From contig CDROCS010002597.1 in assembly GCA_977020255.1 (NCBI GenBank), positions 372,001 to 407,041 of the forward strand: 35,041 nt of DNA. The letters run 5' to 3'. The position numbers and the translations under genes were made by a program. Positions within the stretch are counted from its first letter, which is position 1, and each line of letters starts with the position of its first letter. The stretch comes from Obrimoposthia wandeli. Its lineage: Eukaryota. Below the pieces are notes generated by a model, which saw only the letters and a program-made list of their open reading frames with translations, was not told the DNA's origin and did no database searches. This document shows positions 870-28,439 of this stretch, in pieces.

Positions 870-2039
870 ATGGATAACAATCACCTGGATACGACTCCAG
901 ACCAGCTCACTCGGTCAGATCAAACAAAAAGCACAGCAAAGATAGAAAGAGGAAAAACGGAAAATATGCCAGAAAGGTGGTTTTTAGCAAAATTCTTGTA
1001 TCAAAACATGCGTCAGTTTAGCAGTGCATACTTTAGAAACAACGGAGGAAGAAAAATGTTTTCAAATCAAACATTTCTTCCTAATAAGTTAAAAATTACC
1101 ACAGAAGAAAGAACTAGCGCACTTATTTTTACCAATGAAAAAAGACCAACCCATATGGCTCTCAGTGAAATATTCCCCAACATTAATTGTGAAAAAATAG
1201 ATATTCACGTGGCACTAGGAGTAGCCCATTTAAAAACCAAATCAGATAAGACATTAAATTTTCTGATGATAGGAAATCACACCTACACCTTACAAGCAGC
1301 TCAATTAGAAAATCAATATAGCATAAAAATAGGAAGAGGACCAAATCTATTATTTATAGAAAACATAAGAAAAGCAGAAGAACCTCAACAAATAACCCTT
1401 TTTGAATTAAAAAACGCACAGAAACCAGCAATTTTATTCCTCGATTGCGAAATGGTGATATCAGTAGATAAACAGCCAGTTTTAGCAAGTGTTTCTATTA
1501 TAAATTACATAGGTAACGTAATTATAGATACACTGTGCGTAACTAGAGACAGAGTAAGAAATTACGTTACTAGAATAACTGGACTGTCAGATAGAAAGTT
1601 ACAAGGATGTAGAGATGCTGATGAAGTAATTGAGGAAGTAAAAAACATTGTGTATGGTAACATCATCGTAGGTGTGGGACTAACAAACGATTTAAAAGCT
1701 TTACGCCTACAGAAATGGATGTTATTCAACATTGTTGATTTAGGAATATCCAAAAGCATAAAATCAGAACTAAATCACAATCACCCAAATATTGGACTCG
1801 CCAACATGGTGCGGAAATACTTAAATATAGAAACACAAAAAGGAGTCCACACTAGCATGGAAGATGCAAATCACACCCGAAAAATTTTCATAATGAAGGA
1901 GGAAATGTTGATTAGAGAGTTTGATTTGACCGAGGTGATGAATCCACCATCTTGCGAGAACAACCCCAGTTCATCCTTCTCGCATAAGACCGGAAACTCG
2001 GAGTCCGGTACACAAAACTCCCTGATTTTGTTGGATTAA
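870..2039 (+). CDS. Intronless DEDDh 3'-5' exonuclease (REX4/ISG20-like domain) with an unrecognised ~185-aa N-terminal region
   Basis: 389-aa ORF. ExoI LFLDCEMV (D192, E194), VRNYVTRITGL, ExoII GVGLTNDL (D274) and ExoIII HTSMEDA (H327, D332) are all present. AATAAA at 2120-2125. Confidence 0.85.
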   Translation: MDNNHLDTTPDQLTRSDQTKSTAKIERGKTENMPERWFLAKFLYQNMRQFSSAYFRNNGGRKMFSNQTFLPNKLKITTEERTSALIFTNEKRPTHMALSEIFPNINCEKIDIHVALGVAHLKTKSDKTLNFLMIGNHTYTLQAAQLENQYSIKIGRGPNLLFIENIRKAEEPQQITLFELKNAQKPAILFLDCEMVISVDKQPVLASVSIINYIGNVIIDTLCVTRDRVRNYVTRITGLSDRKLQGCRDADEVIEEVKNIVYGNIIVGVGLTNDLKALRLQKWMLFNIVDLGISKSIKSELNHNHPNIGLANMVRKYLNIETQKGVHTSMEDANHTRKIFIMKEEMLIREFDLTEVMNPPSCENNPSSSFSHKTGNSESGTQNSLILLD

Positions 2040-2431: not shown

Positions 2432-2483
2432 ATCTCCGACGGGAAAAAAGCCCGTTTCGCCCTGCCGGGCTCATCAGGGAGAT
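2432..2483 (-). ncRNA. Type I hammerhead ribozyme (HHR1), intact core
   Basis: Minus strand: AUCUCC-CUGAUGA-GCCC(GGCA)GGGC-GAAA-CGGG(CUUUUUU)CCCG-UC-GGAGAU. It has a 6-bp stem I, 4-bp stem II, stem III and a GUC triplet. Predicted cleavage between 2438 and 2437. Confidence 0.9.
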
Positions 2484-2488
2484 GGCGT

Positions 2489-3042
2489 GTTATCTCTAAC
2501 TTCGCGGTGGATTCCGCGAAGCCAGAGATAACAATAATAAAGCCAGGGAAAAGATTTCCCTTTCATGTGCCGACGAATATCGTCGACATGTGGTGTTAGT
2601 GTGCGCAAGTGCACCATTCACACACACACACACTCACTCAACATTAACACATCACTCAACTCACTCATTCACTCTCACTACTCACTCAATCGCTCACACA
2701 ATCCCTTGCTCACTCACTCCCTACTCACCTATTCTTTGTGCATGTGTGTGTTTAATTTGGCATTTTACACCTGCCCAGAATTTTGAATGACGGTGAAATT
2801 TCCCGGCTGCACATGTGTGTGTGTGTGCAGAGCCGGGAAATGCCAGTTTCCTCTACCCAGGTCTTTTCCTAATGACGGTGAAATTTCCCGGCTGCACATG
2901 TGTGTGTGTGCAGAGCCGGGAAATGCCAGTTCTGGTGGTGTTTCGGGCAGGCAACGAGGATTGATAACTGCCGGTTTTCCCACCTGCCCATCTGCTTATA
3001 TCGAATCTATGCAGTCGAATTGCAGATATATAGACGGGCAGG
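2489..3042. other. GC-rich cluster of nested hairpins, including a 63/61-bp direct repeat
   Basis: Paired arms: GTTATCTCT 2489/AGAGATAAC 2532 enclosing CTTCGCGG/CCGCGAAG; GGGAAA/TTTCCC 2546-2560; CATGT-CGACGA/TCGTCG-ACATG 2564-2590; CCTGCCC 2770/GGGCAGG 2951; CCTGCCC-ATCTGC 2983/GCAGAT-GGGCAGG 3042. Direct repeats at 2786-2848 and 2871-2931 each fold via ATTTCCCGGCT/AGCCGGGAAAT. Confidence 0.75.
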
Positions 3043-3130
3043 AAAGAAATTGCTATATAATTTTACAATTGATAGAAACAAAAATTATTATGAAATTACC
3101 AAAAACACGAAACTATTATATTTAATTCAG

Positions 3131-3826
3131 ACAATTTTTGGGATCGTGATTTTGAATTGGAACACAAGTTGTGATTTTATGAAAATTTAAATATTATTGA
3201 AACTACAATTTTTGGGATCGTGATTTTGAATTGGAACACAAGTTGTGATTTTATGAAAATTTAAATATTATTGAAACTACAATTTTTGGGATCGTGATTT
3301 TGAATTGGAACACAAGTTGTGATTTTATGAAAATTTAAATATTATTGAAACTACAATTTTTGGGATCGTGATTTTGAATTGGAACACAAGTTGTGATTTT
3401 ATGAAAATTTAAATATTATTGAAACTACAATTTTTGGGATCGTGATTTTGAATTGGAACACAAGTTGTGATTTTATGAAAATTTAAATATTATTGAAACT
3501 ACAATTTTTGGGATCGTGATTTTGAATTGGAACACAAGTTGTGATTTTATGAAAATTTAAATATTATTGAAACTACAATTTTTGGGATCGTGATTTTGAA
3601 TTGGAACACAAGTTGTGATTTTATGAAAATTTAAATATTATTGAAACTACAATTTTTGGGATCGTGATTTTGAATGGGAACACAAGTTGTGATTTTATGA
3701 AAATTTAAATATTATTGAAACTACAATTTTTGGGATCGTGACTTTGAATTGGAACACAAGTTGTGATTTTATGAAAATTTAAATATTATTGAAACTACAA
3801 TTTTTGGGATCGTGATTTTTGAATTG
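3131..3826. repeat. 74-bp tandem satellite, ~9.4 near-identical units
   Basis: GGGATC recurs at 3140, 3214, 3288, 3362, 3436, 3510, 3584, 3658, 3732 and 3806, an exact 74-bp period. The unit contains the CACAA-G-TTGTG palindrome. Confidence 0.95.
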
Positions 3827-4183
3827 AATAAAAGTTATTTGCAAGTTATTGGACTTTTAACACAAAGACCAAAATAGAAAACCTCATCTCTGTAAAATCT
3901 AAGAGTAAAAATCAATATTTTCGTGCACACAAGATATGTATTAAAGATAAGATAGCCAAATGATGAGTTCTTCATGAATGCATGTGTCGAGATTAACAAT
4001 AGAATTGTGAACTCTGGATTTTTAAACATTTAATTATTAAAAAATTGTAATTATAATTAATTTTAAAATTTGATGTTTAATTATAGAATTGATGGAGAGA
4101 TTGTTAATTGGGATGTTGTTAATTAGAATTTAATAAATGCACTTTGATATTTTGTTTTTTTTATAAAAAAGAAAATTTTAACT

Positions 4184-4227
4184 CCAGACCGGCTAAGCCA
4201 GTTTCGCCTGGCTAGGCTCGTCAGTGA
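4184..4227 (-). ncRNA. Type I hammerhead ribozyme (HHR2), intact core, short stem I
   Basis: Minus strand: UCA-CUGACGA-GCCU(AGCC)AGGC-GAAA-CUGGC(UUA)GCCGG-UC-UGG, with a GUC triplet. Predicted cleavage between 4187 and 4186. Confidence 0.85.
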
Positions 4228-5710
4228 TGGGGCGAATATATAATGTATTTATCCAGAAATTCTGCCCAAGGAGGCAGAACAGCCAGAACAAGCGGTTTGG
4301 AGGACCGTTTCACTCTCCTCCGATATTCTCTTTTCACTGTGGCCTTCCTCTAACTGTAGTAGGGACAATCTTCTTTGCCAGTTCTACACAGCATCCCACT
4401 GGCGCCACTGTCGCTTCAATTCTGATGCTGCTACTTATCACAGCGGCAACAACAACAGCAGGCCGACATTTTTGTGTATATGCTCAGATACATGCAGAAT
4501 ACACCACACACGCACAATCTGTAACACAATGCATAATATCTTCCTATTCTCACTCCTCAACATCCTCTTACTGTCCTTCCTCTCTCAGACACAATTTTGT
4601 GTCATTGTGCCTGTATTTGGTAAATTGTATGCGTGTGTATATGGATCTCTGTGCTACATCGACAACATTGACTAGCAACAAACTTTGCTTGTCGGTTTAT
4701 CTCTCTCCTCAATTCCTCAACAGCTCGGACCAGCAATGCAATAACAGCAGTATCTATCTTTCTGGTTCAATCTAATTGTAACAATTTCAGATTCCATGTC
4801 ACAATTCTGTCTCTCCCTGTCTTATCTCTCATCTTTTGTGTGTGTGGAGAGGATGCATTCTGACAAACCTTTGATATGTGTTCGTCCATTACCGTCTGTT
4901 GCCACGCGGATGGAGGGGTTAACCATAGCCAGATGAAATTATGAGCCAAAACAGACAATTTCCCCCTCTCTTGGTCTTGGCAGCCAACAGCGCTACTTTC
5001 TTCACCAGTCCGTTCACAACAGCTTGAGTGCAGCCTTGGTACCAATAAAATTCTCTCTAATCGATATAAAACAGCAGTCATGCTGTTAATATCTTTCCAA
5101 ATTTGCCCAATAAATATAATTTATCAAGCATTATTTTTGAAATTAACTGTTATTTTATTCAACTATTTGAAACATCAAATGCTCATTTCTATTATTGTTA
5201 GATTAAAGGAAAGCTAAATTAAAACTAAATAATACATTTATATATAACGAATATTTAACCTCAAAATATTGAAAGTTAAAAATAAAATAATTAAAGAATA
5301 TGTTTTTTAAATAAATTAGAATAAGTTCTTTTAGATAAAGTGAGATCTTGGAGAGGTCTTTAAAATGTGTATAAAAATAAAAGTGTAAAAACACAGAAGA
5401 AAATTGAGACATAGAATTAAGGCAATCATTAAGAAAACGAGAAAGATTCTATAATCAGAATTCACAGTCCATTCGCGGAAGAAGAATCGTGACTGCTACA
5501 TTCCGATCAGCGACATCACGAACGACAACAATTTCTTACGATAACGCAGAAAATGCAATTAAAGCAGAAACGTCAAGTCTAACTGAAGGACTACAGAGAA
5601 GTCAATTTTACTTGAAGAAAAGCGTGAATACCAGGATATCGCATCAAAATGACAACGAAAATCGGTGAGGGAGAACGAAATTAAAACACATTTAAACTTA
5701 ATTGTTTTAA

Positions 5711-11242: not shown

Positions 11243-12040
11243 TCAGGCCTCGGGTTAGCGTCTCGTTGGTTAATTCTGGTGAAAGTTTAAATTCTCTAGA
11301 CTGGTGATGCTCCAAAAGCTTGTTGTGATACTAGAGATGGTGTTATTAAAAGTCTTAATCGTTTGAGTTGGAAAATATTTAGTTATATTCTAAACTTTAA
11401 CACCCATAAACTGTTACAATTTAAATCCGTAAGTTTTAAAGAATTTAAACATTTTGGAATTTTACATTCCTGATTATGTATATGAAGGAAATAGTTTCCA
11501 GCTTGAAATTGATCCCAGTCTGGCTTTTAAATATGATCTAGGATATTTGATTACTCCAATTCTAGATGAAGAACAATGGAATATCTCAATACGTCTCAAT
11601 GGATAATTTGCTGATGACGGGAAAATGCAGCCTCTTTGGACTTTGAAGCTATAAGATGTTTTATGATATGATGTTTTATTATAAGCCAATATGATGTTTT
11701 ATGTTTAATAAATGTTTTGAAAATAATTTTGACTCGTATTTTGTTTTACTCCTCTAAATTATATAGATCTGACCTAATTTTTCTCTTATAAATCTGACCT
11801 AAATATTTAACTAAAACATGTAGTAATCTCAAATCTTTCTTAAAAATAGTAGTAATATATTCACATATTATTTTAAATCTCGTCTGCGATAAGCCGATGG
11901 GGTCAATATGGATTCCCGTGGTCTTCTCTAATCACCTTTGAGATTCGTGGTAAATTTCAAAGTAAAATAAAAAATATGTGGGAGGAGGACCCCCCCTCCT
12001 ATTCGATGCTTTTTCAATTTTTCAAAAAAAAAATTTCCCT

Positions 12041-12145
12041 ACACACATACACGAAAATTCACTCCACACACATGCACGGTTTTAAAGGACAGTGGTAGCA
12101 ACCCCGGGGGAAGGGGGTGGATTAGACCGGAAACATCCACCTACT
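12041..12145 (-). mobile_element. Maverick/Polinton terminal inverted repeat end (5'-AGTAG on the - strand)
   Basis: Matches the reverse complement of 26775-26860 (CACTCCACACACATGCACGGTTTTAAAGGACAG...GTGGATTAGACCGG...CATCCACCTACT). Mavericks typically end in 5'-AG...CT-3', often AGTAG. Confidence 0.7.
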
Positions 12146-13373: not shown

Positions 13374-15203
13374 ATTACGAGTTCTATGATTATCTCCTTG
13401 ATGAAATAGATTTGTGATAACTTCTGATAACTTGTGATAACTTCTTTTATCTTCACTTCATCAATAGTTTCTTCTCTTCTAATCGCTGTTGGTGGTGATG
13501 TTGTTGGTAATGTTGCTGCTGCTGATGATGTTGCCACTGATGTAATTTTCTCCATTTTTCAGTTCAGAGTTGAAGGTTTTACTCTTATATACTAATCGAG
13601 GTTTGATTTCATTAGAGCATCAGTTTCATCATAACTGCATGATTTAATTGGAGTATTATTCAAATTTTTAATTTTACTTAACATCTCATGTAAATGTAGT
13701 TGATGATGTAACCTAAATATAGAGTTAAATTAACTACTAATAAAAATGACTTATTATTATTTTTCTTAATTAAAGCACCGAGAATAACTCATGCAAGATC
13801 TTGTAATGCATCCTGCACCTCTTTACAATCAATAACTTCATCCATTTATGATAAAGCAAATAAAATATTGTTTATAACTCAGAAAACAAAGAAAAATCTA
13901 TTTTAATAAGTGTTGAATTTCACCAGTATTACTGATTAAGTATGGAATTAAATAAGTAGTATTGATAAAGTATTGAATTAAATTGAGAGTTAATCCATTC
14001 TAGAGTGTCACCCTATTGTTGTGTAACGTTGTATTAATAATTTTTAAAATAAATATAGTTAAAATAAAGTCGCAAGACAAAATTCCATTTTAATATTGAC
14101 TACCCCTTGCATAATATTCGGATTAACTAACCTATAGGTCAGCTGAGTATTAACTCACGTGGCGGTGATCCAAACCCTGGTGTACTCAGAGGATAACTAA
14201 GCCCCGATGTTAAATTATTTGATTAGGATAAAATTTGTCTCATGTTCGTTAGATATCATAGCAAATGGTAAAACTGTTATATGAAAAAACGGAATCCAAA
14301 TTGTTATTTTCTAAAAATGTTCAATATCCAAAATTAAATTCGTGTCTACCAAAAATTGTGTCATTAACAATACTGTCTTTACTGCAGACATATCTGCGAA
14401 TATTCACAATGCCAACTACTGCAAACAGGGACACACATAGGGACATGATAACGTCCAACAATGATAGCAGCAGAACACTAGCACAGTTTTAGTATACATT
14501 TACGATGATATTAGAGATTAAATTGTGCTGACACAGAACGAGAAGAAAACAATGGGAAATAGCACAGAAGAGATTGTCAGGTTGAGAAATTTGACGTATC
14601 TCGATAGTGAAAAATACTGCGGCAACACCGCTATGAGATGGAGAAAAGATAGAAGGCTGCACATGGATGTGGTCTGTACGGAGGAATATGTTCGTTAGGT
14701 CATAGAGGGAGAGTGTTATACCATGGAGAAAAGAAACAGCTCCACCTGATGGAGAAATACAGGGAAAGAGGCGGCTTTAGGAGAGATATAATCAGTTGAC
14801 CACTGCCAGCTAAAAACGCTGTCCAACTGATCCGTAACTCATGTACCGAGAATGTATACCACCGCGAAATTGTTGTTGCTGTTGGGTATAGAAGGAAATC
14901 GATTGAAACACCGATTGGCAGGAGAGATGGAACTGCATTAGGCACAACACAAACGACTGCAGACAAGTGGATCACATATGTCTCTCCATGTACCGGCTCG
15001 ACTAGCGGAAGCAGCAGACTGTCATCCACAGCCGACCGATTTGGATGACAGAGGAAGATTGTGAGAAGGACGGTGGAGGAGGACGATGTAGAAGAAACCG
15101 GGACCACTAGAGATTGGTTTGTGAGGCTGCTGTTGCTGGGCGGAAAAGTATTTGTTGTCAAACCACTTTATCTTGTTAGATTTATCTCTGACATTATGTG
15201 CCC

Positions 15204-15254
15204 CCTCCCTGACGAGCCTGGCAAGCCAAAACGGGGGTTTTCCCCCATCAGAGG
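15204..15254 (+). ncRNA. Degenerate hammerhead ribozyme (HHR3), probably inactive
   Basis: CCUCC-CUGACGA-GCCU(GGCA)AGCC-AAAA-CGGGGG(UUUU)CCCCC-AUC-AGAGG. Lesions: stem II mismatch (15226), G12>A (15228), C-A mismatch in stem III (15247) and a stem I mismatch. Flanks match HHR2 (ACATTAT..GCCCC upstream; GAG(G)TTAAAATT downstream). Confidence 0.7.
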
Positions 15255-15343
15255 TTAAAATTGTTTTCTTCCCTGATTGTGGTCACCTCAGTCAAATATC
15301 AATTTAAATGATTTGACATAAATAAATTTTAAATCCCAACACT

Positions 15344-16144: not shown

Positions 16145-19100
16145 ATGAGTGTAGAGAATGCAGGTTGGAAAATCAATCCTGGATACAGTACAAACGTACT
16201 GATAAATAATTGGTTTGAAGAACGATTACAAGTGAGAGTGTTTTAGTTGATAATTATATATTTTATTGTGTGTTCAGTATGACAAAGAGCTGCAGAATCA
16301 CTCTACCACCTATCGTACTAGTTTCAATCGCGGTTCGAATCCCTTTCCTGATGTCATAAATCGTCGACGGAATTGGCTGAGAAGTGACGGAGTGGGCCCA
16401 GACTTTTTGTTGAAGCACCACGGTCACGTGTATGAAGATTCGCGAATCACCTGGTACGACCAGGACTTCAACAAGCGGGAGCGACGAGGCAGGAATATTC
16501 TGCCTCCTCTACGCCAGTGGGATAGCAGCACTATGCACTGGATCCCAGAGAAATCAGACTTTCCCATTTACGGTGCGAGCAATCGATATTTCATCATCAC
16601 ATTCACCTTCATAATTGGGAAACGCAGTTTAGACATCGATCCCAACTTGTAGGTCAAATTTCATGAGTGTGGACGGATATAGAAAATATATTTTTCTGTT
16701 GCAGAAATGTTGAAACCCAGGCGGCGTCAGCTTTAAGTTGAAATATATCCCAAATTTCTGGAGATATGTAAATGAAACTTTGCATATTTAATATAGACAT
16801 CGATCAAAACTTGCACCCTAAATTACGTCATCTTTTCCAAACGGGATTCAGTCGGGATTCAACAAAAACAATTTTTCACTGAGTAATAAAATTCTGATGG
16901 AACTGAAATTTGGCAAGCAACTTGTGATCGATGTCTGGCCTCCATTTCCAAAGTTTCGTTCAGAAATATTTATTCCTTCTGGAGATATTCTCCCGCAAAG
17001 CCGGTTTGACCCGCATTTATACATTTCTGAAAGTACATTATTAAGGGAATTCATAAATAATAAACCATCAAATTATCTATGTGATCACGGAGTCTTTTGG
17101 AGTGATTTTCAAAAAGGTTAAAAATGATTTTATCGCTTTGACCATTACCGACAAATAATACTTCGTTCATTGTTAATATTTTATTTAAATAACATTTTCA
17201 AAATATCTTGTTCTCGGTATGATTTAAGAATCGTTTTATTTACATTTTCCTTTCTTAGCTATTTAGGATTATTATTTTTTCAACAAATTATAGCTTCATT
17301 TTACATGCATTTTGAAAGTTGTTTTAATTAATAGTAAACATAACAACATTTTTAAACTCATTTTAAACAATTTATTTACGCAACAATTTATCAAACATGG
17401 ATCGGAAAATTATTTTGTTTTTGTTTTTGTTACTGGTAGTCAATAATTTTGTTTTGTTTGTTAGATATTTAGCTTCAGAAATGTATAAATGCTGGTCAAA
17501 CCGGCTTTGCGGGAGAATATCTGCGGAGGAATAAATATTTTTGAATGAAACTTTGGAAATGGTGGCCAGGCATCGATCACAAGTTGCTTGCCAAATTTCA
17601 GTTCTATCAGAATTTTATTACTCAGTGAAAAATTGTTTTTGTTGAATCCCGGCTGAATCCCAGATGGAAAAGATGACGTCCAAAATTTGGGTTTAGACTG
17701 ATTGTTTATCTCAGTAAAATTAACTTGAAAATATGATATGAAAGTTTGGGCCACGGTGAAAAATCAGATGAAACCGGAGCTGTGTAGTCACTACCCAAAA
17801 TCCGACTCCAACTCCAAGAAAACTCCGAATCCACAGTCGCTTCCACTTTTAAGCTACATAATCAAATGTCCTCCTATACATACATACGCTACTCTACTGT
17901 ATATTTAGAGCAATTTGAGAATTTGCCTAATAATAGTACACATCTCCACTTCATTGAAGCAGCAATACCATCTACAATTGGCCCCTTTCTTTGGGACAGT
18001 TGAAATTTATGGTTCTTCGACTCTTTCAAGAAAATTCCTGGTGTTAAATCATCAGATTGAAATATTTTAGTCTGCAATTGAGTGATGAATCAGCTCTGCC
18101 AATTCAGACCTCTTTGTCCATTGAGGCTCGGCCATATCCACAGGAAAATGATTCGGGCCCAGCAAGCGCTGACTCATTAAGTAGGTACTTCTCCAGCGTA
18201 AAGTTTGATCCGTCATTGAGCTCTTCCCAGCGCCTCTTTTAACAAATAATCCAGTTTTGGTGTTCTGGCAGCGGGACTACATTTCTTGTCAATCAGATCT
18301 GTAAAATAAAAATAGTGACGAAAAATCATCTCTCACATTCTGTAGTTTTCAGGGTTTCTTCGGTTGTATACTAATATATTTTGCAAAGATGGAATGGCTC
18401 TTAAACGGTAATTTAAACACACCTTTCGAAATTGCGCCTGCTAGTTGTTACGGTCTTATTATGGATGTCACATTATAGTTGCATTACTTTTGTGAAGTTT
18501 TTATATTTTAGGGTCGGAGTTTATTCGGCGCTGGGCAAGGGTTATGACCGAGAATTTTTTCTCACACAGAAACTTTTTATCTGTAGTAATTTTCAAACAA
18601 TTAATTTAATTAACAAAATGAATAGGACATAGGGAAATATACGATAAGATTATAAGTAAAGAATACAAATACATCCGTGGCTATTACCAGAATCAAGTAA
18701 AAATATAAATGAGTGCAAATGATCAAAATTGTCTATCTACATTTTCCCTTTCTTCGCGGCTCAGCTTTCAAACATGAACAAACTCTCAGAGGACATTTGC
18801 AGTAACGTTGTCTTTGGCAGGAGTCCCTTCTCCAAGGCTATATGATCCGGTTCTTGTTCAACTTGAATTTTGCTGCAGCGTTCCAATAGCACAATTCGAT
18901 ACATCGCCTGCGGTCACAGCTCCCATAACATTTGCTAATATCACTCAATATCCCCAGTATCACACCGGTCACTGTTCACACTGCGCTGGTTCCCCCAGGA
19001 GCATAATTTGAGATTTGCAAAAATAGGCGCTGAGGGAGATTTACACTTTTAGGGAACTTAAAAATTAAATGGTAAACTGAACTCTTTAACTGGAAAACTC

Positions 19101-22100
19101 CTTCATAACGTCTTACTTTTCTTTCTATCCTCCTCTTCAATCCATAGAGTCCTTTTGAAAAGGAAATGATCAAGACGACTCGACAAATCAGAGTACAAAA
19201 GCTCGTCTTTGAAACGTTGCTGTCACGCACCAATGACCTAAGTTTCAGTGCCATATCACCAATACCTCTTTCAACACATCGCTGACTTTGCAGCTGTCTG
19301 AAATGTCCCTTAATCCGGATGAAGTTTGTAAAATTGATGCCAACTTCTGGAAATGTTAGAAAATGATATCAGACCTTAAAAGTCTTTCTAGTATCGTTCA
19401 GCATTTCAAAACAGCAATAATTATATTCGATTTCGTATTACAAAGTCCAAGGAAACTTGCAATTATCTCTACCATTTTAATTTTTTAGAAAAATATTTAG
19501 AGACCTTATATTTTTATTTTCTGAATAGCAAAGTCTTCAGCTGCTTCTTGAATTTTTCAATATTGTTTTAGTTTTTATTATGTTATTTGAGTTTTTTGAC
19601 TAATCTGCTGTTATTATCGTTGCTTCTAAAATGCTTATACATGTTTGCTGCACCAGGCTCGAGAAGATTTTAAAAATATTTGAGATTTTGTGAGAGAATA
19701 CATTTTTTGATAAAAAGTAATTTATTGAAATGAATTCTGACATTGATCGGTAGCCAATAAAGCTTCATCAAATTTTCACTTCTGCTAGCACTTTTCTTTA
19801 GTTAATTTAAAATCACAATATTAGACTGTTGTAACACTAAAAGTAAGAATACGGACTCGAATATATTAATCTAACTCCCAAATCCAATATGTCGTCAATT
19901 CAGATCTGCATGTTCTTCGCTTTACTACTTATTTGGCGACATCAAGTCGTGAGAAATAAAGGTGTTCAATACTGTTTGACGCGCCTTGATTTGGATTGAA
20001 TGTCAGTTCAAAAAGTGTGGTGGCAAATGTGAGTAAAGTTTTGTCGACGAATAACCGAGTGCATGAAGGAACGGATTCTTATGTCGATGACATCGTGGTC
20101 AAGGAGGTTCGAAACCTTTTAGATGAATACGGTTTTGAATCAAAGCAAGCGGAACCATTGTCTGGAGTACTCGTGCTTGGGTTGCGTGTGTTTCTAGAAG
20201 CTAACCTTATGTCATGGATAATGGACAATATGTTGACGGGCTTTGAAAGCGCAATTACTTGCAGAACACATTTTTCCTTGTGTGGTATGTTGTTAGGTCA
20301 TTTCCCTGACACAGGATGGCTGAGGCCGGAAACAAGTTACATAAAACGATTGACAAATGGAATGAAGTGGAATAATGTTGTTGATGCAAATGTAATGGTG
20401 TTAGTAGAAGAGATGTGGGCGCGTGTTATAAAGAATGATCCGTACATGGAATATGGTCATTTTCAAATACATGCGCAGGGACTGTTTGGTGTGATCCGAG
20501 TTGTCTGGCGATCGGTGTTGTGGTCGACATCGGAGGGGATGTCGTGTAAGATTTCAATTAGTTGCGGAAAGTTAATGACGGGTCACATATTAACCCTGCC
20601 GAGTTGGAGTCCGTCATTAAAGGATTGAATTGTGCCATCAAGTGGGGTTTGTCTCAAATCACTGTGATGACAGATTCTTCAACTATGTACGGGTGGTTGA
20701 ATGTTAAAACAACTGGTCCATATATAAAGTGAAAACTCATGGTTTAGGAGAAGCTTTGGCACATAGACGAATGTCCATGGCGAAAGATTTGATAAGTGAA
20801 TGTCGTCCTGGTGTAGTCGTGTGGTTTGTTAAGTCAGCACAAAATGAAGCAGATGAACTTACCCATGTTCCACATAGTTGGTTAGCAAAGCGCTGCATTG
20901 CAAACATAGCGCGTAGCGGGACATCAAACGCGTGAAGCCCATACGCAAGTTGAATCATTTTAGTATTTATAAGACGTTGTTTGTGGTGAACCACCAATAT
21001 CCCGACTTAAAAGTAATGCGTGGGGAAATTAAATCCATTGCACAGAACATTGAAAGATGCTTGCATGTCGATCCTTCTCAGTTAAATGGAAACATGGAGA
21101 GTTGGCTGTAGAAAGAAGTTGGAGTCGTTTGGCATGTGACGTGGCACATTATCTTGAGAAACGTCACCTGACAATTATTGACTGTGGTCCTAGCTGTTTA
21201 TGTGTGAGGAAGTTGTTAAAAGACGAAACGAAGTTGGAAGTGTCCAGTGCAATGGCGGATGTTTTCAGGGAGCATGGACTACCGGATGAGCTGTTATTCG
21301 ATAATGGTGCAACTCTCCGTTCCCATATGTTTGGCGAATTGTGTAGCAAAATGAAGGTGAAGGTTTATTTATCGCAGTACATATCGACCGTCGGGAAATG
21401 GCATTGTGGAGTGGGTACACCGTACTGTGAAGCAGATGGCGGCTAGAAGGGATGTGGATGTACGAGACATGGCTTAATGGTTAAAAATAACCCCGCGTGA
21501 TGAAACAAAAATTGAATCAGTACCCGTGAATGTGTTGTACAAGTATGAGTGGCGGTATCTGAATGTTGTTGGCATTGCATTCTCTGTTGCTGCAACATCG
21601 AATTAATTTGTCGTTGGGTCCAAGGTTTTCGTTAAACCACCAGGGATGCGATGTATAACACATTGGCCGAAAGGAACCGTCACTGGAAGTGAACGGCATC
21701 TCGAGGCACGTGTCTGGTTTGAGGTTGATTCCTGATACAATGGATGAGGTGGATCGAAACGTTGAGACGACTCATGCGGAGATATTTGACGAAGAGGTTC
21801 AACCTGATGAAGTGATGATCGGGGAGGAAAGCGGCGCTGGGGTGACAGATGCAAACAAAGTTCCCGGCGCGAGCGGTAGACCTGCTAGGCAAACGAGACG
21901 ACCAGCGTTTCTAACAGATTACATCGAATAATGATCTTGAGATCATGTGTGGCTTTTCTATTTATTTAAACAAATCGCCAATCACAACTGTGACATCTAA
22001 AAGTAACAATTATACATTTTGTAATTTATGTATGTAATTTTACTTAAAACTTTGATTTATATTATATTTTTAGATTTATTACGATGAAACAGCAATCAAC

Positions 22101-24096
22101 AACTGATAAAGAAAATATATTAGTCATTGTGAAAATAAGTTAAAGCTTTAGAGAAATACGACATATCAACCACAGAAGTCACGTAACAATCAAGAGTTTA
22201 ATCGATAAATTTAATAAAAATAATGGCACTACTAACAACTTATTAGAAGGTAGCAAAAAAAGGATAAATCAATTTAAAATTTTGTGTACTAATATCTATC
22301 TGCTTTAGATGAGCTAGTATGCTGCACGATATCAAGTAAAAGAAAGCCAGTAGAAACAAAATTATTTAGTCAGTGTACACCCAATTCTCTTTTTTAAACT
22401 GTTTTGAAATAACACGGTTCACAAAAGTGTAATTATTTCTTTATACACGTTTTTTGCACGGTTATTTTACTTACGGTCAGTAATTTTAGCAAAGTTCATC
22501 TACAAATACATCCGTAAATCGTTCTAGTTAAATGGAAACTAGAGGCCAAAATACACACACAATTATCTTAGAAGGATTCCAAGAAGCATGTATGTATGAA
22601 AAATCTTATGATGAAATTTATTTATGAATGAGATGCAATATTCATTAGATAACTGTTTTGTTTCATAGTATGCACCTATAATTGACCGGAACGCCAATTA
22701 TAGAATTGTTTTGGCTTTTTGTAATGATATTGGAGAATATATTGGATATTCTAAAAGAAAGTAATTGCATGGCAATAAAACTTTCCAATGCCTTTTTAGG
22801 TAATTTAATTGCATACATCTTTCGGCTATTTAAACCAGAGTTTTGTTTAAAATAAAAATAATTATTTTATATTCCGTTAAGAATAAAAACCTGATGTTTT
22901 TAGCTCGGTTTATATATATTTCTTTCGATTTTCACGTTTTTGAAAGTTATGGAACGTATCTCCTATTTTATTATGGAGTCTATAACTTTTTGACATGGTT
23001 TTCTGTGGAAGATATCTATCGTGTAAACAGAAAATTAGGTGTATTTTTAATTTTTTGTTGTAAAATTCATAAATTTTTTTTCAAAATAATAATTAATTTT
23101 AAGTTATATTAGACAGATTTGGCATTGTCTATTAAAAATCTAAATTAAAAGATATTAATAATGTATTATTTACTACATTTATTTATAATAAATAAATTTA
23201 TGACTTAAATTTTTAATGCATTTTTAAGAGCATATTTTTGAAAAGATGAACAAGAACAATATAAAAATCTTATTATTTTATCTTTAACTTTAATAATAAA
23301 ATCAAAGTTATTTTTGAAATTTTCCAAAAATTAGCAAATTAACTTAATTATTCTAAAACTCTTTATAACTGCTCACTATAGGATGAACTTAACAATTGGA
23401 CAATATATTCTTTCTTGATTGGTTATATTTTTTCTTAATTTTACTGCTTTAGTATCACGTTCATCTTATTGTACGTGCTAGCAGATGTAATTTTCATTTA
23501 TGTCAAGACGTGATTTCAAAATTTTATTTTTAAAACTGAATATTTAAACAATTATTTTAAATCTCAATTGTGAAAAATTTCAATTTGCACTTGTTCAAAT
23601 TTTCTTCGGAGAAAACCGACTCTTCAATTGTATATCCACGTATATAAAACAGAAATTTATAAATATAATTCGATTTATTTTACTTGGATATTGTTATAAT
23701 CCTTTATTAATCTATTTTAAATTTTAATTATTCAATTTTGATTTAAAATATATCCTAACTGTACGAATGCCCCAAATTTCCGCTTTAAAATTCCTTAAGT
23801 AATCCGTTCGTAGGGCGAGTGTATCGTTGAGTTTGTGATTTGAATTTTTTTATTGAAATATTATCACAATTGCGACTACGTCAATATTAAGTAGTTGCTG
23901 TTGACTAATATTCCACACTGGTACAGATTCACCGACTAATTGGGGCCTGGCCGAGAGCAAGCAGCGCCGATGGGGCAGCCAGTTTGCAGATATGCTGAAG
24001 CCGGACCTGATGACGACATACACAAACAGCTTCCACAGCCCTGAGCGCAGCGCCTATTCACGACCAAAGCCGATCAAGCCGATGGACAATGTGTGA
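16145..24096 (+). CDS. CFAP107: Cilia- and flagella-associated protein 107 (C1orf158), three exons, 183 aa: 16145-16231, 16278-16572, 23927-24096
   Basis: Exon 1 MSVENAGWKINPGYSTNVLINNWFEER; exon 2 ...LPPLRQWDSSTMHWIPEKSDFPIY; exon 3 (D)SPTNWGLAESKQRR...TTYTNSF. These track human YSTKVLTGNWMEER...LPPLRTWNGQKLLWLPEKSDFPLLAPPTNYGL...STYTSSY as remembered. GT-AG introns of 46 nt (phase 0) and 7,354 nt (phase 1); branch-like GACTAAT at 23903-23909; frame closes on TGA at 24096. Confidence 0.88.
16825..17679. mobile_element. Foldback/MITE-like element: ~205-bp inverted arms (16825-17031, 17474-17679) around a ~440-bp AT-rich spacer
   Basis: The arms are reverse complements with few mismatches, e.g. 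GATTCAACAAAAACAATTTTTCACTGAGTAATAAAATTCTGAT versus its reverse complement near 17605-17648. No TSD identified. Confidence 0.8.
17885..18300 (-). pseudogene. hAT transposase remnant
   Basis: Frames read AARTPKLDYLLK, TDQTLRWRSTYLMSQRLL (the hAT TRWxSTxxM motif) and FQSDDLTPGIFLKE...IVDGIAASMK. A TCCGACTCCAACTCC subterminal-type motif lies nearby at ~17800. Confidence 0.75.
19510..19810 (-). mobile_element. LINE (CR1/L2-like) 3'-end remnant
   Basis: Minus frame IEKFKKQLKTLLFR resembles the FKxxLKTxLF terminus of ORF2. A homologous copy lies at 25140-25420. Confidence 0.5.
19975..21931 (+). mobile_element. LTR retrotransposon pol remnant in RT-RNaseH-integrase order (Ty3/Gypsy-like), frameshifted
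   Basis: GTDSYVDDI (RT), VLGLRV, FSLCGxLLGHFP..GWLRP, LACDVAHY...IDCGPS, PDELLFDNG (integrase) and a C-terminal RQTRRPAFLTDY. No LTRs found. Confidence 0.85.
22083..22800 (+). mobile_element. Possible Tc1/mariner transposase remnant
   Basis: MKQQSTTDKENIL..SFREIRHINHRSHVTIKSLIDKFNK (HTH-like), followed by scattered RPKYT and TPIIELFW fragments resembling DNDPKH and LNPIExLW. Heavily decayed. Confidence 0.35.
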
Positions 24097-25139
24097 AACA
24101 ATGATCTGCTAGCATGATTATGATGTCAACCTCATTATCATACTTCAGTGGTTTTATCTTTACTATTACTTTTGTATTGTCAACATTGATAAAGGGGTTT
24201 TGTTTAGTATAATCATGAATATAAATCTGATCGATTTGAATATTTAACATTAAAATAAAGATGTTTTATTTTAGTAAATACTTTATGTTAAAGAATAACA
24301 TCTAAATAAGATGAATTATTCAATATAAAAAAATTTCTAAAAACAGTTTTGTATTTTTAATGTAAAATACGGATTTTGAGGAAAAAATCCCAATTGGGCA
24401 ACTCTGAATTTTAAAATAATCAATTTTAAATAAAGTCAAATATTTATAAAATGTTATTTTTTGTCATTCATAACTACTGAATACCTGTATAAACGGAGAA
24501 AATTTGAAAATCATAATATTAATTTGTTTAAATTTTTTTAAATAGTCAAATTTCAAACGAAACTTGTTTTGAATGAATTGTTTTCTACAATTATGACTGT
24601 ATTTAATAAATACGTTTTACTATTTTTTTCATATAAATTAAACTAACATTAATAATATTTATGCTTTTGAATTATTGTGAACTTCAAATTCGTATTTGTA
24701 ACCAATATTTTAACTTTTAAAATAGTATCTGTTAAAACTCAACATTATATTTATTTAAAATATAATAAACTTAAAGCAAGACTTTCTATAATTTTTTTAT
24801 TACAAAGTTACTTTTGATGTATATATTTTTAGAAAATATTCACAATCAATTTAATATTTTTTGCCTATTAAATAAAAAAATGATTAAGATTGAAGGAAAT
24901 TGCTTGAAATTAATCCTATGTAAGTGGTCTAAAATATACGTAATTATGTTTACATTTTTTAGAAAATTTATTTAACTTCTTCTATTTATAAAAATAAACC
25001 AATAAAATATATAAATTATAAAAAATTCTTTAAATGTGGACTTTTAACATTTGATTAAACTAAATTATAAGAATAGCAATAATGTAGCCTAATATGTAAA
25101 AACATTATTATTTATTACTCAAAAGTGCTTCGTGCTTTC

Positions 25140-25420
25140 CAAAATTTATTCTGAATAGTAAAGTCTTCAGCTGCTTCTTGAATTTTTCAATATTAATTTT
25201 CATTCATTGTTGTAAAGATTCAAAGCTCTAAATATAAATATTTCATAACTCATTTTGTTATTTGAGATATTTTGATTAATCTGCGGTAATAATCGTTTCT
25301 CTTAAGATGCGCGAGGCTCGAGAATATCATATAAATATTTGGGCTTTTGTATGAAAATACATATTTCTGGCATTGATTGGTAGGTAAATTCTCACTTGTA
25401 CTCGAATTTTTCTTTAATTT
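25140..25420 (-). mobile_element. LINE (CR1/L2-like) 3'-end remnant, second copy
   Basis: Shares CTGAATAG(C/T)AAAGTCTTCAGCTGCTTCTTGAATTTTTCAATATT with the 19.5-kb copy. Minus frames read FRALNLYN and IEKFKKQLKTLLFR. Confidence 0.5.
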
Positions 25421-26983
25421 GAATACAATTCTAATTGTTAGGGGCTTTGTTAAATATTTTTAAAAATGATTTAATTTATAAGTTGGAATATTAAACTAAA
25501 AGAATTCTGAAAATCAAGTCTTGGTGTAATAATGTGATAGCGTAGATCTCAGCAGTAAGATTTATTTTATTTGTTGATAAATATTTTCCTTTAAACATTT
25601 GACAATTGATTGTAATGTTTTCATTGATTTCATGACCAATGTTCTTTATTTTAGATTTTAAATTTATAATAATTTTCGTGACATGTACAAAACTTCTTTT
25701 TTTAAATGGTTTGTCTATTTCTTAGACCAAAATAATAAGGCCTCAGTTTTATTTTCACCAATCTTCAATTATATTGATTTCATCTATATACATATTTCCA
25801 TCATAGAATCTATTAAAAATATATATTGACAACATTATTTAAAATAAATTACTGTAGCCAACATTTAACTACTTCCTGATCAATGTAACACACTGTAAAT
25901 GAAGACATAAACATTAAGTGAACGACAAGTTAAACAACTTTGGATTTAGCACTAGTGACATTAAAAGTAAAGTGTTTTTCTTTGATCAATATATTAATTG
26001 AAATCAGCCAAATGGAAGTCACGACATTTTTACAAACTCAATAAGTTTTTGTATAACCCATAAGATCCCCTAATATATTGAAAATATTGTTGATAATTAA
26101 TTATATACTGAAGAATTCTCTAACATTGCTACATGATTTTGATGATAATATCACACATTTTCAAGTGCAAATCTTTTGATAAGGAAAACCTTTTGAAAAT
26201 TCATTAGTAACGTAAAGTGTACTTTTTCAAACTAGAAATAAGAAAATAGAACAACATGCAAAAAGTATTGTGTGCTGTACTCGTTTTATATTGGCCGTTT
26301 TAAGTGTCCAACACATTATAGCAGAAAGTCGTCTTGTTTTGTATTTTTAGAAAAGCACACTTTAGACTACTATATATGGAATTTTGTAGTCGGGAGTACC
26401 CAATTTCTGTGCTTGAGTCGAAACATATCTGAAACAAGGGCCCGCAAGTAGAAATCAGGATTAGTGCTCTAATCTATTTTTGATATTGGAAACACTTCAT
26501 CACTCCTATGAGCTTAGAAATACTGATATGGTTACCGAGTTATAATTTTGGTTTAACGACTATTGTTTTGAGATTGAATCAATGTGCATGAAACCATTTA
26601 AACCTCAATGTTATTCAAGTTAATTATAAGTGGAAGTACTTCAACCCATTTTTAGTACCGATCGCCGTAAAGTAGCAATCAGTCTCTTAATGTCCTATTA
26701 AATTGTTCTACTACCGTGGCCTTAGTAAAGGGATGTCTGTCTTTCAGGACAAAGTCTTCCGATCACTCATCCTGAGTAGGTGGATGAGTCCGGTCTAATC
26801 CACACCCCTGTCCTTTAAAACCGTGCATGTGTGTGGAGTGGAATTTTGTGTAGGTGTGTGGAGTGAAATTTTGCTCCACACACATGCACGGTTTTAAAAG
26901 ACAGGGGGGTCCCAAAAAAAGGCTCGGGATGGGTGTATATCATAGACTTCCTTGGGTGTTGGGTGTTGGAGGGTGGGTGTAAA

Positions 26984-27399
26984 TCGATGGGTGTTGGGTG
27001 AAAGTCGATGGGTGTTGGGTGAAAGTCGATGGGTGTTGGGTGAAAGTCGATGGGTGTTGGGTGATGGGTGAAAGTCGATGGGTGTTGGGTGAAAGTCGAT
27101 GGGTGTTGGGTGAAAGTCGTTGGGTGTTGGGTGAAAGTCGATGGGTGTTGGGTGAAAGTCGATGGGTGTTGGGTGAAAGTCGTTGGGTGTTGGGTGAAAG
27201 TCAATGGGTGTTGGGTGAAAGTCGGTGGGTGTTGGGTGAAAGTCGATGGGTGTTGGGTGAAAGTCGATGGGTGATGGGTGAAAGTCGGTGGGTGTTGGGT
27301 GAAAGTCTATGGGTGATGGGTGAAAGTCGATGGGTGATGAGTGAAAGTCTGTGGGGGATGGGTGAAAGTCTGTGGGTGTTGGGTGAAAGTCGTTGGGTG
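26984..27399 (+). repeat. 21-bp G-rich minisatellite (GATGGGTGTTGGGTGAAAGTC)n, ~20 units
   Basis: Read directly from the sequence. The repetitive ORFs at 26815-27549 are translations of this array. Confidence 0.95.
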
Positions 27400-28040
27400 A
27401 GGGGTGTAAGTTGGTGGGCGTTGGGCCGGTGGTGGTTCACCACCAACACTACACCACACAACACCACATCACACCACACCACAAACAACACCACACCACA
27501 CCACACCACAAACAACACCACCCACCGAAACACTCCGCCCGCCCCATAGGGGCGGGCTTCATTCTCGCGAAAATAACTACAAAAACATGCGCTACAGTAT
27601 TTTTCTTTAACTTTACCTCTCACAACTACACATGTAGACAACCCGTGTCACACCCCAGCCCCAAACATACACCGCACACCGCCCGCCCCTTCGGGGCGGG
27701 CTTCATTCTTGATCTTTAGGCACGAAAAACATTACAAAAAATAAATGATTTGAATCAGACGCAATTTTTTGCGCCAAATTTAAAATTTTCAAAATGGCTT
27801 TAAAACAAAAAAATAAAATATTAAAATTTAAAAAGAAAAAATCTTAAAATTTTACACATAATTTTTTACAATAATTTTTATAGTTTAAAAATATAATTTT
27901 ACACAGAACTTTTATACTTTAGAATTAAAATTTTAAACTTAGAAAAAGACAAAGACGAATTGGATACAAATATTTATTAAACAAAAGAGAAAAATTAGGT
28001 ACAATAAATTTGTGACATAAATTCAAACATACAAAAACAA

Positions 28041-28439
28041 TTATTCAAGTGAAAAAACATCTGGATATCTGTGATGTCCGTAGACAACTGACCGGTTTTT
28101 CTCTACCCATTTTCTCTTATCGTCATTGCTATTCAATGCGATCTTACTCATATTTACGGTATAGAGCTGGTGATTAATTGAACTAATGCGTTGTTGTCGC
28201 ACTTGTTCACTAACCCCACTCTCATATGCAGCTAAATAATTCGCATGGCGTAGCGCAGTCTGCTTAAGGCTAATTCCCTTTGCTCTCATCTGGGACTTTC
28301 CGTCTATAGTTTCTAAGCTATATGATTTGGGGCGTAAAAATACCCATTGCTTATATCTACATTGCTTACTCTCATCCTTAAACTTGCCTATCGCAGTATT
28401 GGCTAAAGGATGGTTTATAGAAAATTTTGATGTGTCCAT
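28041..28439 (-). pseudogene. Protein-primed B-family DNA polymerase (Maverick pPolB), C-terminal 132-aa fragment
   Basis: DTS..HPL...IGKFKDE...FLRPKSYS...RAKGI...RISSINHQLYT..KIALNSNDDKR...YGH. The catalytic N-terminal part is absent, and the frame is closed just upstream. Confidence 0.85.

What the first reader, a model, noticed from the sequence alone, without database searches (positions are those of the whole stretch)
2438..4186. 1,749-nt RNA cassette excisable by two co-oriented hammerheads (retrozyme-like circle candidate)
HHR2 and HHR1 are on the same strand, so double cleavage would give a unit from 4186 to 2438 with a 5'-OH and a 2',3'-cyclic phosphate. RtcB-type ligases circularise such ends in retrozymes. 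The ribozymes also share diverged downstream sequence (CAAAGTGCA...AATTCTA...CCCAATTAA), like old pseudo-LTRs. Unlike described retrozymes, the two repeats are strongly diverged and the cargo is a satellite plus a hairpin cluster.
Basis: partly seen in the sequence, partly recalled or inferred. Interest (0 to 1): 0.75.

Follow-up and report, generated by a model that had tools for sequence, protein, structure and literature searches.

The report
Scattered hammerhead ribozyme relics, not a circle
The two self-cutting RNA motifs are real and on the same strand, but they are two of three scattered copies of one short ribozyme-bearing repeat, only one of them looks able to cut, and the 1.75 kb between them is unrelated repeat DNA, so this is ordinary transposon debris, not a new circular RNA.

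Summary
The cleavage sites, after C4187 and C2438, are 1,749 nt apart. A structural descriptor finds exactly these two motifs in the window and none in 500 shuffled windows.

- **HHR1 (2432-2483)** is a canonical type I hammerhead. It scores 32.4 bits on Rfam RF00163, against a threshold of 34, and the hammerhead fold is its minimum-energy fold.
- **HHR2 (4182-4230)** has a complete core and complete helices II and III. Helix I has only three contiguous pairs, Rfam's type I model does not match it, and a rival hairpin is about 11 kcal/mol more stable.
- **HHR3 (15194-15260, plus strand)** is a third, decayed copy.

So this is a dispersed family whose shared unit is only about 65-85 nt. The "pseudo-LTR" similarity downstream is no better than chance (119 of 1,000 shuffles score as high). 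The interval holds a young 74-nt satellite, a GC-rich palindrome cluster and a microsatellite, with no protein domain.

**Best reading:** relics of a hammerhead-bearing non-autonomous retroelement (retrozyme monomer or Penelope-like 3' end). Only HHR1 would plausibly cut a minus-strand transcript. A 1.75-kb excised circle is not excluded but is unlikely (about 5%).

The parts
2438..4186 (-). It is a composite of unrelated repeats, not a demonstrable unit.
   Evidence: Sequence. GC 32.5% and 57% of bases paired in the minimum-energy fold. Excess structure sits only in 2438-3045.
2432..2483 (-). HHR1: canonical type I hammerhead. It has a complete core, helix I of 6 bp, helix II of 4 bp and helix III of 5 bp. 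Predicted cleavage is after C2438.
   Evidence: Rfam RF00163, 32.4 bits against a threshold of 34, E 1.5e-5. The minimum-energy fold is the hammerhead fold at -19.9 kcal/mol, with an ensemble share of about 0.41. Descriptor hit.
4182..4230 (-). HHR2: hammerhead-like copy with a complete core and complete helices II and III, but a weak helix I (three contiguous pairs). Predicted cleavage is after C4187. Probably impaired.
   Evidence: No Hammerhead_1 match at E <= 10. Hammerhead fold -9.1 to -9.7 kcal/mol against -20.6 for the minimum-energy fold; ensemble share about 1e-8. Homologous to the other copies.
15194..15260 (+). HHR3: third, decayed copy of the same motif on the opposite strand. It carries one substitution in the invariant core and four stem positions that cannot pair (counts only).
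   Evidence: blastn to HHR1: 75% over 57 nt, E 3.9e-6. blastn to HHR2: 70% over 76 nt, E 1.3e-6. Sequence, no Rfam match, pair counts.
3131..3826 (.). 74-nt tandem satellite, 9.4 copies; young.
   Evidence: TRF reports 99% matches. Nine full monomers have mean pairwise identity 98.2%. As RNA it is less structured than shuffles, z +2.1.
2760..3045 (-). GC-rich palindrome or hairpin cluster, including an exact duplication with an 83-85-nt period (2786-2931).
   Evidence: Repeat families D12 and D14. Fold z -5.2. Structure shown.
2615..2728 (.). Degenerate (TCAC)n / (GAGT)n-type microsatellite, purine-rich on the hammerhead strand.
   Evidence: TRF rows; sequence.
2488..2533 (-). 20-bp hairpin four bases upstream of HHR1. 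It contains two G-U pairs on the hammerhead strand.
   Evidence: Minus strand -33.4 kcal/mol with 20 pairs; plus strand -28.1 kcal/mol with 18 pairs.
3827..4181 (-). AT-rich stretch downstream of HHR2. It holds the quoted words CAAAGTGCA, AATTCTA and CCCAATTAA.
   Evidence: GC 23%, fold z -0.7. Similarity to HHR1's tail is not above chance.

Best explanation
The window carries three diverged copies of one short hammerhead-bearing repeat: HHR1 and HHR2 on the minus strand and HHR3 on the plus strand. They are most likely relics of a non-autonomous, hammerhead-carrying retroelement family. That could be dispersed monomers of animal-type non-LTR retrozymes, or 3'-end (pseudo-LTR) fragments of Penelope-like elements.

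Only HHR1 keeps a fully canonical type I hammerhead. If the minus strand is transcribed, HHR1 should cut between 2438 and 2437, leaving a 2',3'-cyclic phosphate upstream and a 5'-OH downstream. HHR2 is predicted to be trapped in a rival hairpin and to cut poorly or not at all. HHR3 is dead.

The 1.75 kb between HHR2 and HHR1 is filler of separate origin (young satellite, palindrome cluster, microsatellite), not the cargo of a mobile unit.

Shown: the motifs, their homology, their folds, the lack of flank homology and the lack of coding capacity. Inferred: the retroelement origin and the cleavage itself.
For: - Motifs far above chance: 2 hits against 0 in 500 shuffled windows.
- HHR1 is canonical.
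- A third copy was found by blastn and read. A custom covariance model run with filters off finds these three and nothing else in the window.
- The copies covary: 4 base pairs change on both sides and 86.7% of cells pair, against 31-49% when partners are slid. The family therefore evolved as a working hammerhead.
- Homology is confined to about 65-85 nt. Upstream and downstream 150-nt flanks are not above shuffles. The 900-nt upstream blocks share neither significant DNA nor protein similarity.
- HHR2 misfolds by about 11 kcal/mol and is missed by Rfam's type I model.
- The satellite is young, while the hammerhead copies are 60-75% alike.
- No Pfam domain in any ORF of 75 aa or more inside or beside the interval.
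- Literature: most Penelope-type hammerheads occur as single dispersed motifs from truncated elements (PMC4209133). Retrozyme monomers are spread evenly along chromosomes (bioRxiv 10.64898/2026.07.22.740005).
Against: - No reverse transcriptase, no target-site duplication and no shared element body were found, so the retroelement origin is an inference.
- The source genome was not available, so copy number and genome-wide spacing are unknown.
- Helix III is long (5-6 bp). That differs from the minimal Penelope-type hammerheads, and resembles the bacterial-type or fungal and protist variants.
- The hammerhead region is much better conserved than its flanks. This could also mean selection on the ribozyme itself.
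- Thermodynamic prediction cannot exclude some cleavage by HHR2. Natural hammerheads with a 2-bp helix I are described (PMC4209133).
Confidence: 0.6

Rival explanations
1. A minus-strand transcript is cut by both ribozymes, releasing a 1,749-nt RNA with 5'-OH and 2',3'-cyclic phosphate ends. An RtcB-type ligase then circularises it. This would be an unusually long retrozyme-like circle carrying a satellite.
For: Both motifs are co-oriented, with complete invariant cores and intact helices II and III. HHR1 is canonical. The 600 nt upstream of HHR1 is highly structured, z -5.1. RtcB circularises retrozyme RNAs in vitro (PMC7229834).
Against: - HHR2 has a helix I of three pairs, no Hammerhead_1 match and an active-fold share of about 1e-8.
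- There is no significant repeat homology around the two ribozymes.
- A third copy on the other strand shows a scattered family.
- The spacing is set by a young satellite.
- Only 57% of bases pair, and the satellite is less structured than chance.
- The size is 4-10 times that of animal retrozyme circles of 170-400 nt (PMC7229834).
Confidence: 0.06
2. HHR2 and HHR1 are the two pseudo-LTR hammerheads of one old Penelope-like element whose coding interior has been lost and overwritten by repeats.
For: Penelope-like elements carry a hammerhead in each flanking repeat, and co-oriented pairs about 3 kb apart flank their RT ORF (PMC4209133). The two copies here are co-oriented at 1.75 kb.
Against: - No RT or GIY-YIG trace in any ORF of 75 aa or more in or beside the interval.
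- No detectable pseudo-LTR homology.
- Helix III is 5-6 bp, not the 1-2 bp of the minimal Penelope-type motif (PMC4209133).
- The interior consists of a satellite and palindromes.
Confidence: 0.1
3. HHR1, and perhaps the others earlier in their history, is a host-kept cis-acting ribozyme. It would trim the 3' end of a structured non-coding RNA made from the GC-rich block 2438-3045.
For: - The ribozyme is much better conserved than its flanks.
- Each copy lies at the 3' edge of a GC-richer block of 0.5-0.8 kb (43-56% GC), followed by more AT-rich sequence (16-30% GC after HHR1 and HHR2, 28-39% after HHR3).
- The block before HHR1 is strongly structured, z -5.1.
- A 20-bp hairpin beside HHR1 has G-U pairs that work only on the hammerhead strand.
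Against: - The three upstream blocks share no sequence, and their excess structure falls from z -5.1 to -2.7 to -1.4.
- One copy is dead and one is impaired.
- The strand asymmetry is small.
- No expression or cross-species data are available.
Confidence: 0.12
4. The motifs are chance matches to a short consensus in AT-rich DNA.
For: A loose pattern gives many overlapping matches, with 9 expected by chance. HHR2 and HHR3 fail Rfam.
Against: The structural descriptor finds 2 motifs against 0 in 500 shuffled windows. Pairwise blastn E-values are about 1e-6 within the window. The stems covary.
Confidence: 0.01

Closest known systems
Animal non-LTR retrozymes (type I hammerhead in short tandem repeats; Cervera and de la Pena 2020, PMC7229834)
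   Same: Type I hammerhead. Low GC (32.5%). No LTR and no coding capacity. Dispersed single copies are also known for these families (bioRxiv 10.64898/2026.07.22.740005). Invertebrate copies have a fairly stable helix III and cut as monomers.
   Different: Here there is no tandem array of a 150-450 bp monomer. The two co-oriented copies are 1,749 nt apart with unrelated sequence between them. Homology is limited to about 65-85 nt. One copy is impaired and one is dead.
Hammerheads in the pseudo-LTRs or 3' ends of Penelope-like elements and their truncated solo copies (PMC4209133, PMC8557442)
   Same: Hammerheads occur mostly as scattered single motifs, sometimes as co-oriented pairs a few kb apart or as nearby copies on opposite strands. 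They are associated with repeat-rich DNA and microsatellites.
   Different: No RT or GIY-YIG ORF was found and no pseudo-LTR homology. The metazoan Penelope-type motif is minimal (helix III 1-2 bp, helix II 6-8 bp), whereas these have helix II of 4 bp and helix III of 5-6 bp. That is closer to the variants reported for fungal and protist elements and for bacteria.
Plant LTR retrozymes (PMC4918200)
   Same: Two co-oriented hammerheads bracket a non-coding interior. A purine-rich tract lies upstream of the 3' ribozyme.
   Different: Plant retrozymes have type III hammerheads, about 350-bp LTRs, a PBS and PPT, 600-1,000-nt circles and GC above 55%. None of these is seen here.
Bacterial and phage type I hammerheads
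   Same: Same architecture, and in a few cases the very same helix II and loop letters as HHR1 (L005, L006).
   Different: That match was forced by the search pattern. Helices I and III and the flanks differ, and scores are 41-48 bits against 77-84 for the window's own copies, which match the model by construction. This is a likeness of form, not evidence of kinship.

Membership tests
Hammerhead ribozyme, type I (Rfam RF00163) | Invariant core (CUGANGA ... GAAA) and a cleavage triplet NUH | tested here: met
   HHR1 and HHR2 have the complete core and a GUC site. HHR3 has one core substitution.
Hammerhead ribozyme, type I (Rfam RF00163) | Three helices around the core, with helix I open | tested here: met
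   HHR1 has helices of 6, 4 and 5 bp, and this is its minimum-energy fold. HHR2 has helices II and III but only three contiguous pairs in helix I. The stems covary among the copies.
Hammerhead ribozyme, type I (Rfam RF00163) | Score at or above Rfam's gathering threshold | tested here: not met
   HHR1 scores 32.4 bits against 34, E 1.5e-5. HHR2 and HHR3 get no Hammerhead_1 match at E <= 10. No match reached threshold anywhere in the window.
Hammerhead ribozyme, type I (Rfam RF00163) | Self-cleavage, and loop-loop tertiary contacts between helices I and II | not testable with these tools
   This needs RNA end mapping or structure data. No loop 1 could be defined from the sequence.
Animal non-LTR retrozyme | Type I hammerhead within tandem repeats of a 150-450 bp monomer (dimer to multimer) | tested here: not met
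   The spacing is 1,749 nt. Sequences upstream and downstream of the two ribozymes are not homologous. The only tandem array in the interval is an unrelated 74-nt satellite.
Animal non-LTR retrozyme | Low GC (below 45-50%), no LTR, PBS or PPT, no coding capacity | tested here: met
   GC 32.5%. No repeat homology. No Pfam domain. PBS was not tested.
Animal non-LTR retrozyme | Expressed as small (170-400 nt), highly self-paired circular RNA | not testable with these tools
   No RNA data. The predicted 1,749-nt RNA is 57% paired, with structure confined to one third of it.
Penelope-like element | ORF with RT and GIY-YIG endonuclease between the flanking repeats | tested here: not met
   No Pfam match in any ORF of 75 aa or more within or next to the interval or next to HHR3.
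Penelope-like element | Pseudo-LTR direct repeats, each with a hammerhead | tested here: not met
   Hammerheads are present, but flank similarity is at chance level.
Plant LTR retrozyme | Type III hammerheads in about 350-bp LTRs, unit of 600-1,000 nt, GC above 55% | tested here: not met
   Type I architecture, no LTRs, 1,749 nt and GC 32.5%.
Plant LTR retrozyme | Primer binding site for tRNA-Met and a polypurine tract | not tested
No tRNA gene lies in the window.

The most novel reading that the evidence does not exclude
Despite its weak helix I, HHR2 may cut during transcription. HHR1 and HHR2 together would then release a 1.75-kb, satellite-carrying RNA that the cell's tRNA ligase closes into a circle. 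That would be a retrozyme-like circle several times larger than any described in animals, with tandem-repeat cargo.
Probability: 0.05. Interest if true: 0.6.

Novelty: new member of a known kind. Interest (0 to 1): 0.25.

Why it matters
Hammerhead ribozymes scattered through eukaryotic genomes are well known, as solo copies, in tandem retrozymes and in Penelope-like elements. This locus adds one more family, in an unidentified AT-rich eukaryote.

Its modest points of interest:
- The family has a long helix III (5-6 bp), unlike the minimal Penelope-type animal motifs.
- The ribozyme is far better preserved than anything around it.

The practical lesson for the scan is that two co-oriented hammerheads do not define an excisable unit. 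That needs both to be fold-competent and their flanks to be homologous.

Tried and rejected
- **Alternative genetic code.** Ciliate and other codes gave no coherent long ORFs, so the standard code was kept.
- **Naming the organism.** The three protein word searches gave only distant or unnamed hits: REX4-like ORF 30%, CFAP107 exon 71% to an 861-nt ENA contig and 42% to axolotl, DUF7047 ORF 39%. Three exact look-ups gave no source organism. The host stays unidentified.
- **Family-specific pattern in metagenomes.** One hit, L001, a GC-rich phage-like contig with an unrelated hammerhead-like motif. The same pattern found nothing in viral contigs.
- **Core plus helix II pattern in bacterial genomes and viral contigs.** 17 loci with generic bacterial or phage hammerheads, similar by construction only.
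- **phages near search** with the region found nothing.
- **Literature search** for the helix II strings found no paper.
- **Antisense ORFs** running away from HHR2 and HHR3 are not similar to each other and have no Pfam match.
- **Upstream GC-rich blocks.** No significant DNA or protein homology apart from low-complexity purine-rich stretches.
- **Whole-window Rfam scan at E <= 1.** It lists the HHR1 locus only as a weak Hammerhead_3 match, so the stricter filters on more sequence lose the Hammerhead_1 match seen. No other ribozyme class appears.
- **One script timed out** without output and was rerun in smaller pieces.
Full report
**1. What is at the coordinates**

On the minus strand there are two hammerhead-like motifs. 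HHR1 spans 2432-2483 with predicted cleavage after C2438. HHR2 spans about 4182-4230 with predicted cleavage after C4187.

I wrote a structural descriptor requiring the invariant core, helix II of at least 4 bp, helix III of at least 5 bp including the A-U pair, a non-G base at the cleavage site, and helix I of at least 3 bp. It finds exactly these two motifs in the window and none in 500 dinucleotide-preserving shuffles of it. The motifs are therefore not chance.

**2. HHR1 is a good ribozyme candidate; HHR2 is not**

HHR1:
- It matches Rfam Hammerhead_1 over the whole model at 32.4 bits, 1.6 bits under the curated threshold, with E 1.5e-5 in a 2.7-kb search. For that reason nothing appears in the threshold-level scan of the window.
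- Its minimum-energy fold is the hammerhead itself, with helices of 6, 4 and 5 bp at -19.9 kcal/mol. That fold holds about 41% of the ensemble.

HHR2:
- It has the full core and complete helices II and III, but helix I has only three contiguous pairs.
- Hammerhead_1 does not match it at E <= 10, even in a 121-nt search.
- Its minimum-energy fold is a rival hairpin in which the 3' strand of helix II pairs with the 5' strand of helix III. That fold is at -20.6 kcal/mol, against -9.1 to -9.7 for the hammerhead fold, which gives the hammerhead an ensemble share of about 1e-8.
- The rival hairpin's strands are transcribed before the 3' strand of helix III. By inference, co-transcriptional folding would also favour it.
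- Natural hammerheads with very short helix I exist (PMC4209133), so cleavage is not excluded. It is not what the sequence predicts.

**3. A third copy changes the picture**

A sensitive self-comparison found a third copy, HHR3, on the plus strand at 15194-15260.
- It is 75% identical to HHR1 over 57 nt (E 3.9e-6) and 70% identical to HHR2 over 76 nt (E 1.3e-6).
- It carries one substitution in the invariant core and four stem positions that cannot pair (counts). No Rfam family matches it.
- A covariance model built from the three copies, run over the whole window with filters off, finds these three and nothing else above noise.
- Across the three copies, 86.7% of stem cells pair, against 31-49% when partners are slid. 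Four base pairs change on both sides. With only three sequences this is modest evidence. It does fit a family that diverged while the hammerhead fold was under selection.

Two of three copies sharing a strand and lying 1.75 kb apart is unremarkable for a family this dense.

**4. The 'pseudo-LTR' similarity is not above chance**

- Local alignment of the 150-nt downstream flanks of HHR1 and HHR2 scores 21.5, against 17.7 +/- 2.8 for shuffles; 119 of 1,000 shuffles reach the observed score.
- For HHR2-HHR3 the figure is 105 of 1,000, and for HHR1-HHR3 it is 870 of 1,000. All three upstream comparisons are at chance.
- HHR2's tail aligns as well or better to several unrelated AT-rich stretches of the window.
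- Detectable homology is confined to about 65-85 nt around the ribozyme.
- 900-nt upstream blocks share only low-complexity purine-rich stretches and no protein-level similarity.

**5. Anatomy of the interval, read 5' to 3' on the minus strand**

| Coordinates | Content | Evidence |
|---|---|---|
| 4181-3827 | AT-rich stretch, GC 23%, no excess structure | |
| 3826-3131 | 74-nt satellite, 9.4 copies; monomers 98.2% alike on average; as RNA less structured than chance (z +2.1) | |
| 3045-2760 | GC-rich palindrome cluster with an exact 83-85-nt-period duplication (z -5.2) | |
| 2728-2615 | Degenerate microsatellite | |
| 2615-2484 | Three hairpins, the last a 20-bp stem four bases from HHR1 | |

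- The whole RNA would be 32.5% GC and 57% paired. Its excess structure sits in the 600 nt next to HHR1.
- The satellite is far younger than the divergence of the ribozyme copies, so the 1,749-nt spacing is a recent product of array size.
- No ORF of 75 aa or more in or beside the interval, or beside HHR3, has a Pfam match.

**6. Context**

The window is 32% GC, uses the standard code and is gene-poor. It holds:
- a REX4-like exonuclease ORF at 870-2039;
- a CHCH ORF;
- a CFAP107 exon at 16254-16649, which points to a ciliated or flagellated eukaryote;
- a dual-specificity phosphatase ORF;
- an LTR-retroelement remnant.

The organism could not be named.

Each hammerhead lies at the 3' edge of a GC-richer block of 0.5-0.8 kb (43-56% GC). 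The sequence after HHR1 and HHR2 is AT-rich (16-30% GC); after HHR3 it is 28-39% GC. This would fit 5'-truncated insertions of an element that carries the ribozyme near its 3' end, but that is inference.

**7. Sequences from elsewhere**

- A family-specific pattern found one unrelated phage-like contig in metagenomes and nothing in viral contigs.
- A core plus helix II pattern found 17 bacterial and phage loci with generic type I hammerheads. Two carry the same helix II letters as HHR1 but different helices I and III and different flanks. That likeness was imposed by the pattern.

**8. Comparison with known systems**

- **Animal non-LTR retrozymes** are type I hammerheads in tandem repeats of 150-450 bp, expressed as circles of 170-400 nt (PMC7229834). 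Family consensus lengths of 51-972 bp and evenly dispersed monomers have been reported (bioRxiv 10.64898/2026.07.22.740005).
- **Penelope-like elements** carry a hammerhead in each flanking repeat. Most such motifs are found as single scattered copies of truncated elements, some as pairs about 3 kb apart around the RT ORF, and some as nearby copies on opposite strands (PMC4209133).
- **The present copies** share the type I architecture, the low GC, the lack of coding capacity and the scattered, partly decayed distribution.
- **They fail** the tandem-monomer test, the pseudo-LTR test and the RT-ORF test. Their long helix III differs from the minimal metazoan Penelope-type motif.
- **Plant LTR retrozymes** differ in nearly every defining feature.

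**9. Mechanism and verdict**

Most likely (0.6): these are relics of a hammerhead-bearing non-autonomous retroelement family.
- HHR1 would still cut a minus-strand transcript at 2438/2437.
- HHR2 would cut poorly or not at all.
- HHR3 would not cut.
- The interval is filler, not cargo.

| Rival reading | Confidence |
|---|---|
| Host-kept 3'-end-trimming ribozyme for a structured RNA | 0.12 |
| Gutted Penelope-like element | 0.10 |
| Chance | 0.01 |

The finding is a new member of a known kind and of low to moderate interest.

**10. Record of conduct**

- The covariance-model tool printed a consensus line by itself.
- Slip: my first notebook entry spells out the kind and place of the defects of the third copy. 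I wrote it before I decided to treat the family as a retroelement-like entity under the operators' added rule. I have left it as written, flagged it in a later note and give counts only here.
- No repaired, consensus or ancestral sequence was built.

Noticed in passing
window 27520-28241 and 34294-35032: Inverted repeats of about 720 nt (up to 98% complementary) bound a unit of about 7.5 kb. The unit contains a dual-specificity phosphatase ORF (33161-33994). The arms carry GC-rich hairpins of the GCCCGCCCC...GGGGCGGGC type. It looks like a large DNA-transposon-like element with a captured or resident gene.
   Followed up: no
window 26974-27533: A 21-nt minisatellite of about 21 copies (26974-27425) is followed by a (CACCA)n-like tract (27438-27533), in a GC-rich, GC-skewed stretch.
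   Followed up: no
window 26799-26913 and 12028-12145: A near-perfect palindrome of about 115 nt draws sub-threshold microRNA-precursor matches on both strands, i.e. a generic long hairpin. Related copies lie 14.7 kb away in inverted orientation.
   Followed up: no
window 16825-17038 and 17467-17679: A MITE-like inverted repeat (arms of about 215 nt, 90-94% complementary) lies immediately downstream of the CFAP107 exon at 16254-16649.
   Followed up: no
window 19475-25199: An LTR-retroelement remnant. It has a DUF7047 ORF (19990-20625) and an integrase-core ORF (21054-21443, below the Pfam threshold), in a 42-45% GC, GC-skewed block. Short direct repeats lie at 19475-19569 and 24949-25199.
   Followed up: partly
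window 4231-5095, 2484-3045, about 14400-15203: Each hammerhead copy sits at the 3' edge of a GC-richer (43-56%) block of 0.5-0.8 kb that shares no sequence with the other two. More AT-rich DNA follows (16-30% GC after HHR1 and HHR2, 28-39% after HHR3). The cause of this repeated layout is unexplained.
   Followed up: partly
L003 and L008 (contig CAXXBX010000061.1, Dehalococcoidia MAG): At least ten co-oriented hammerhead-like motifs lie at roughly 0.5-1 kb spacing along one bacterial contig. This is an array of ribozymes unrelated to the finding.
   Followed up: no
window 870-2039: An intronless 389-aa ORF with an RNase T / REX4-type exonuclease domain has almost no relatives in the word search (one hit, 30% identity). 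The source organism is poorly represented in public protein sets.
   Followed up: partly
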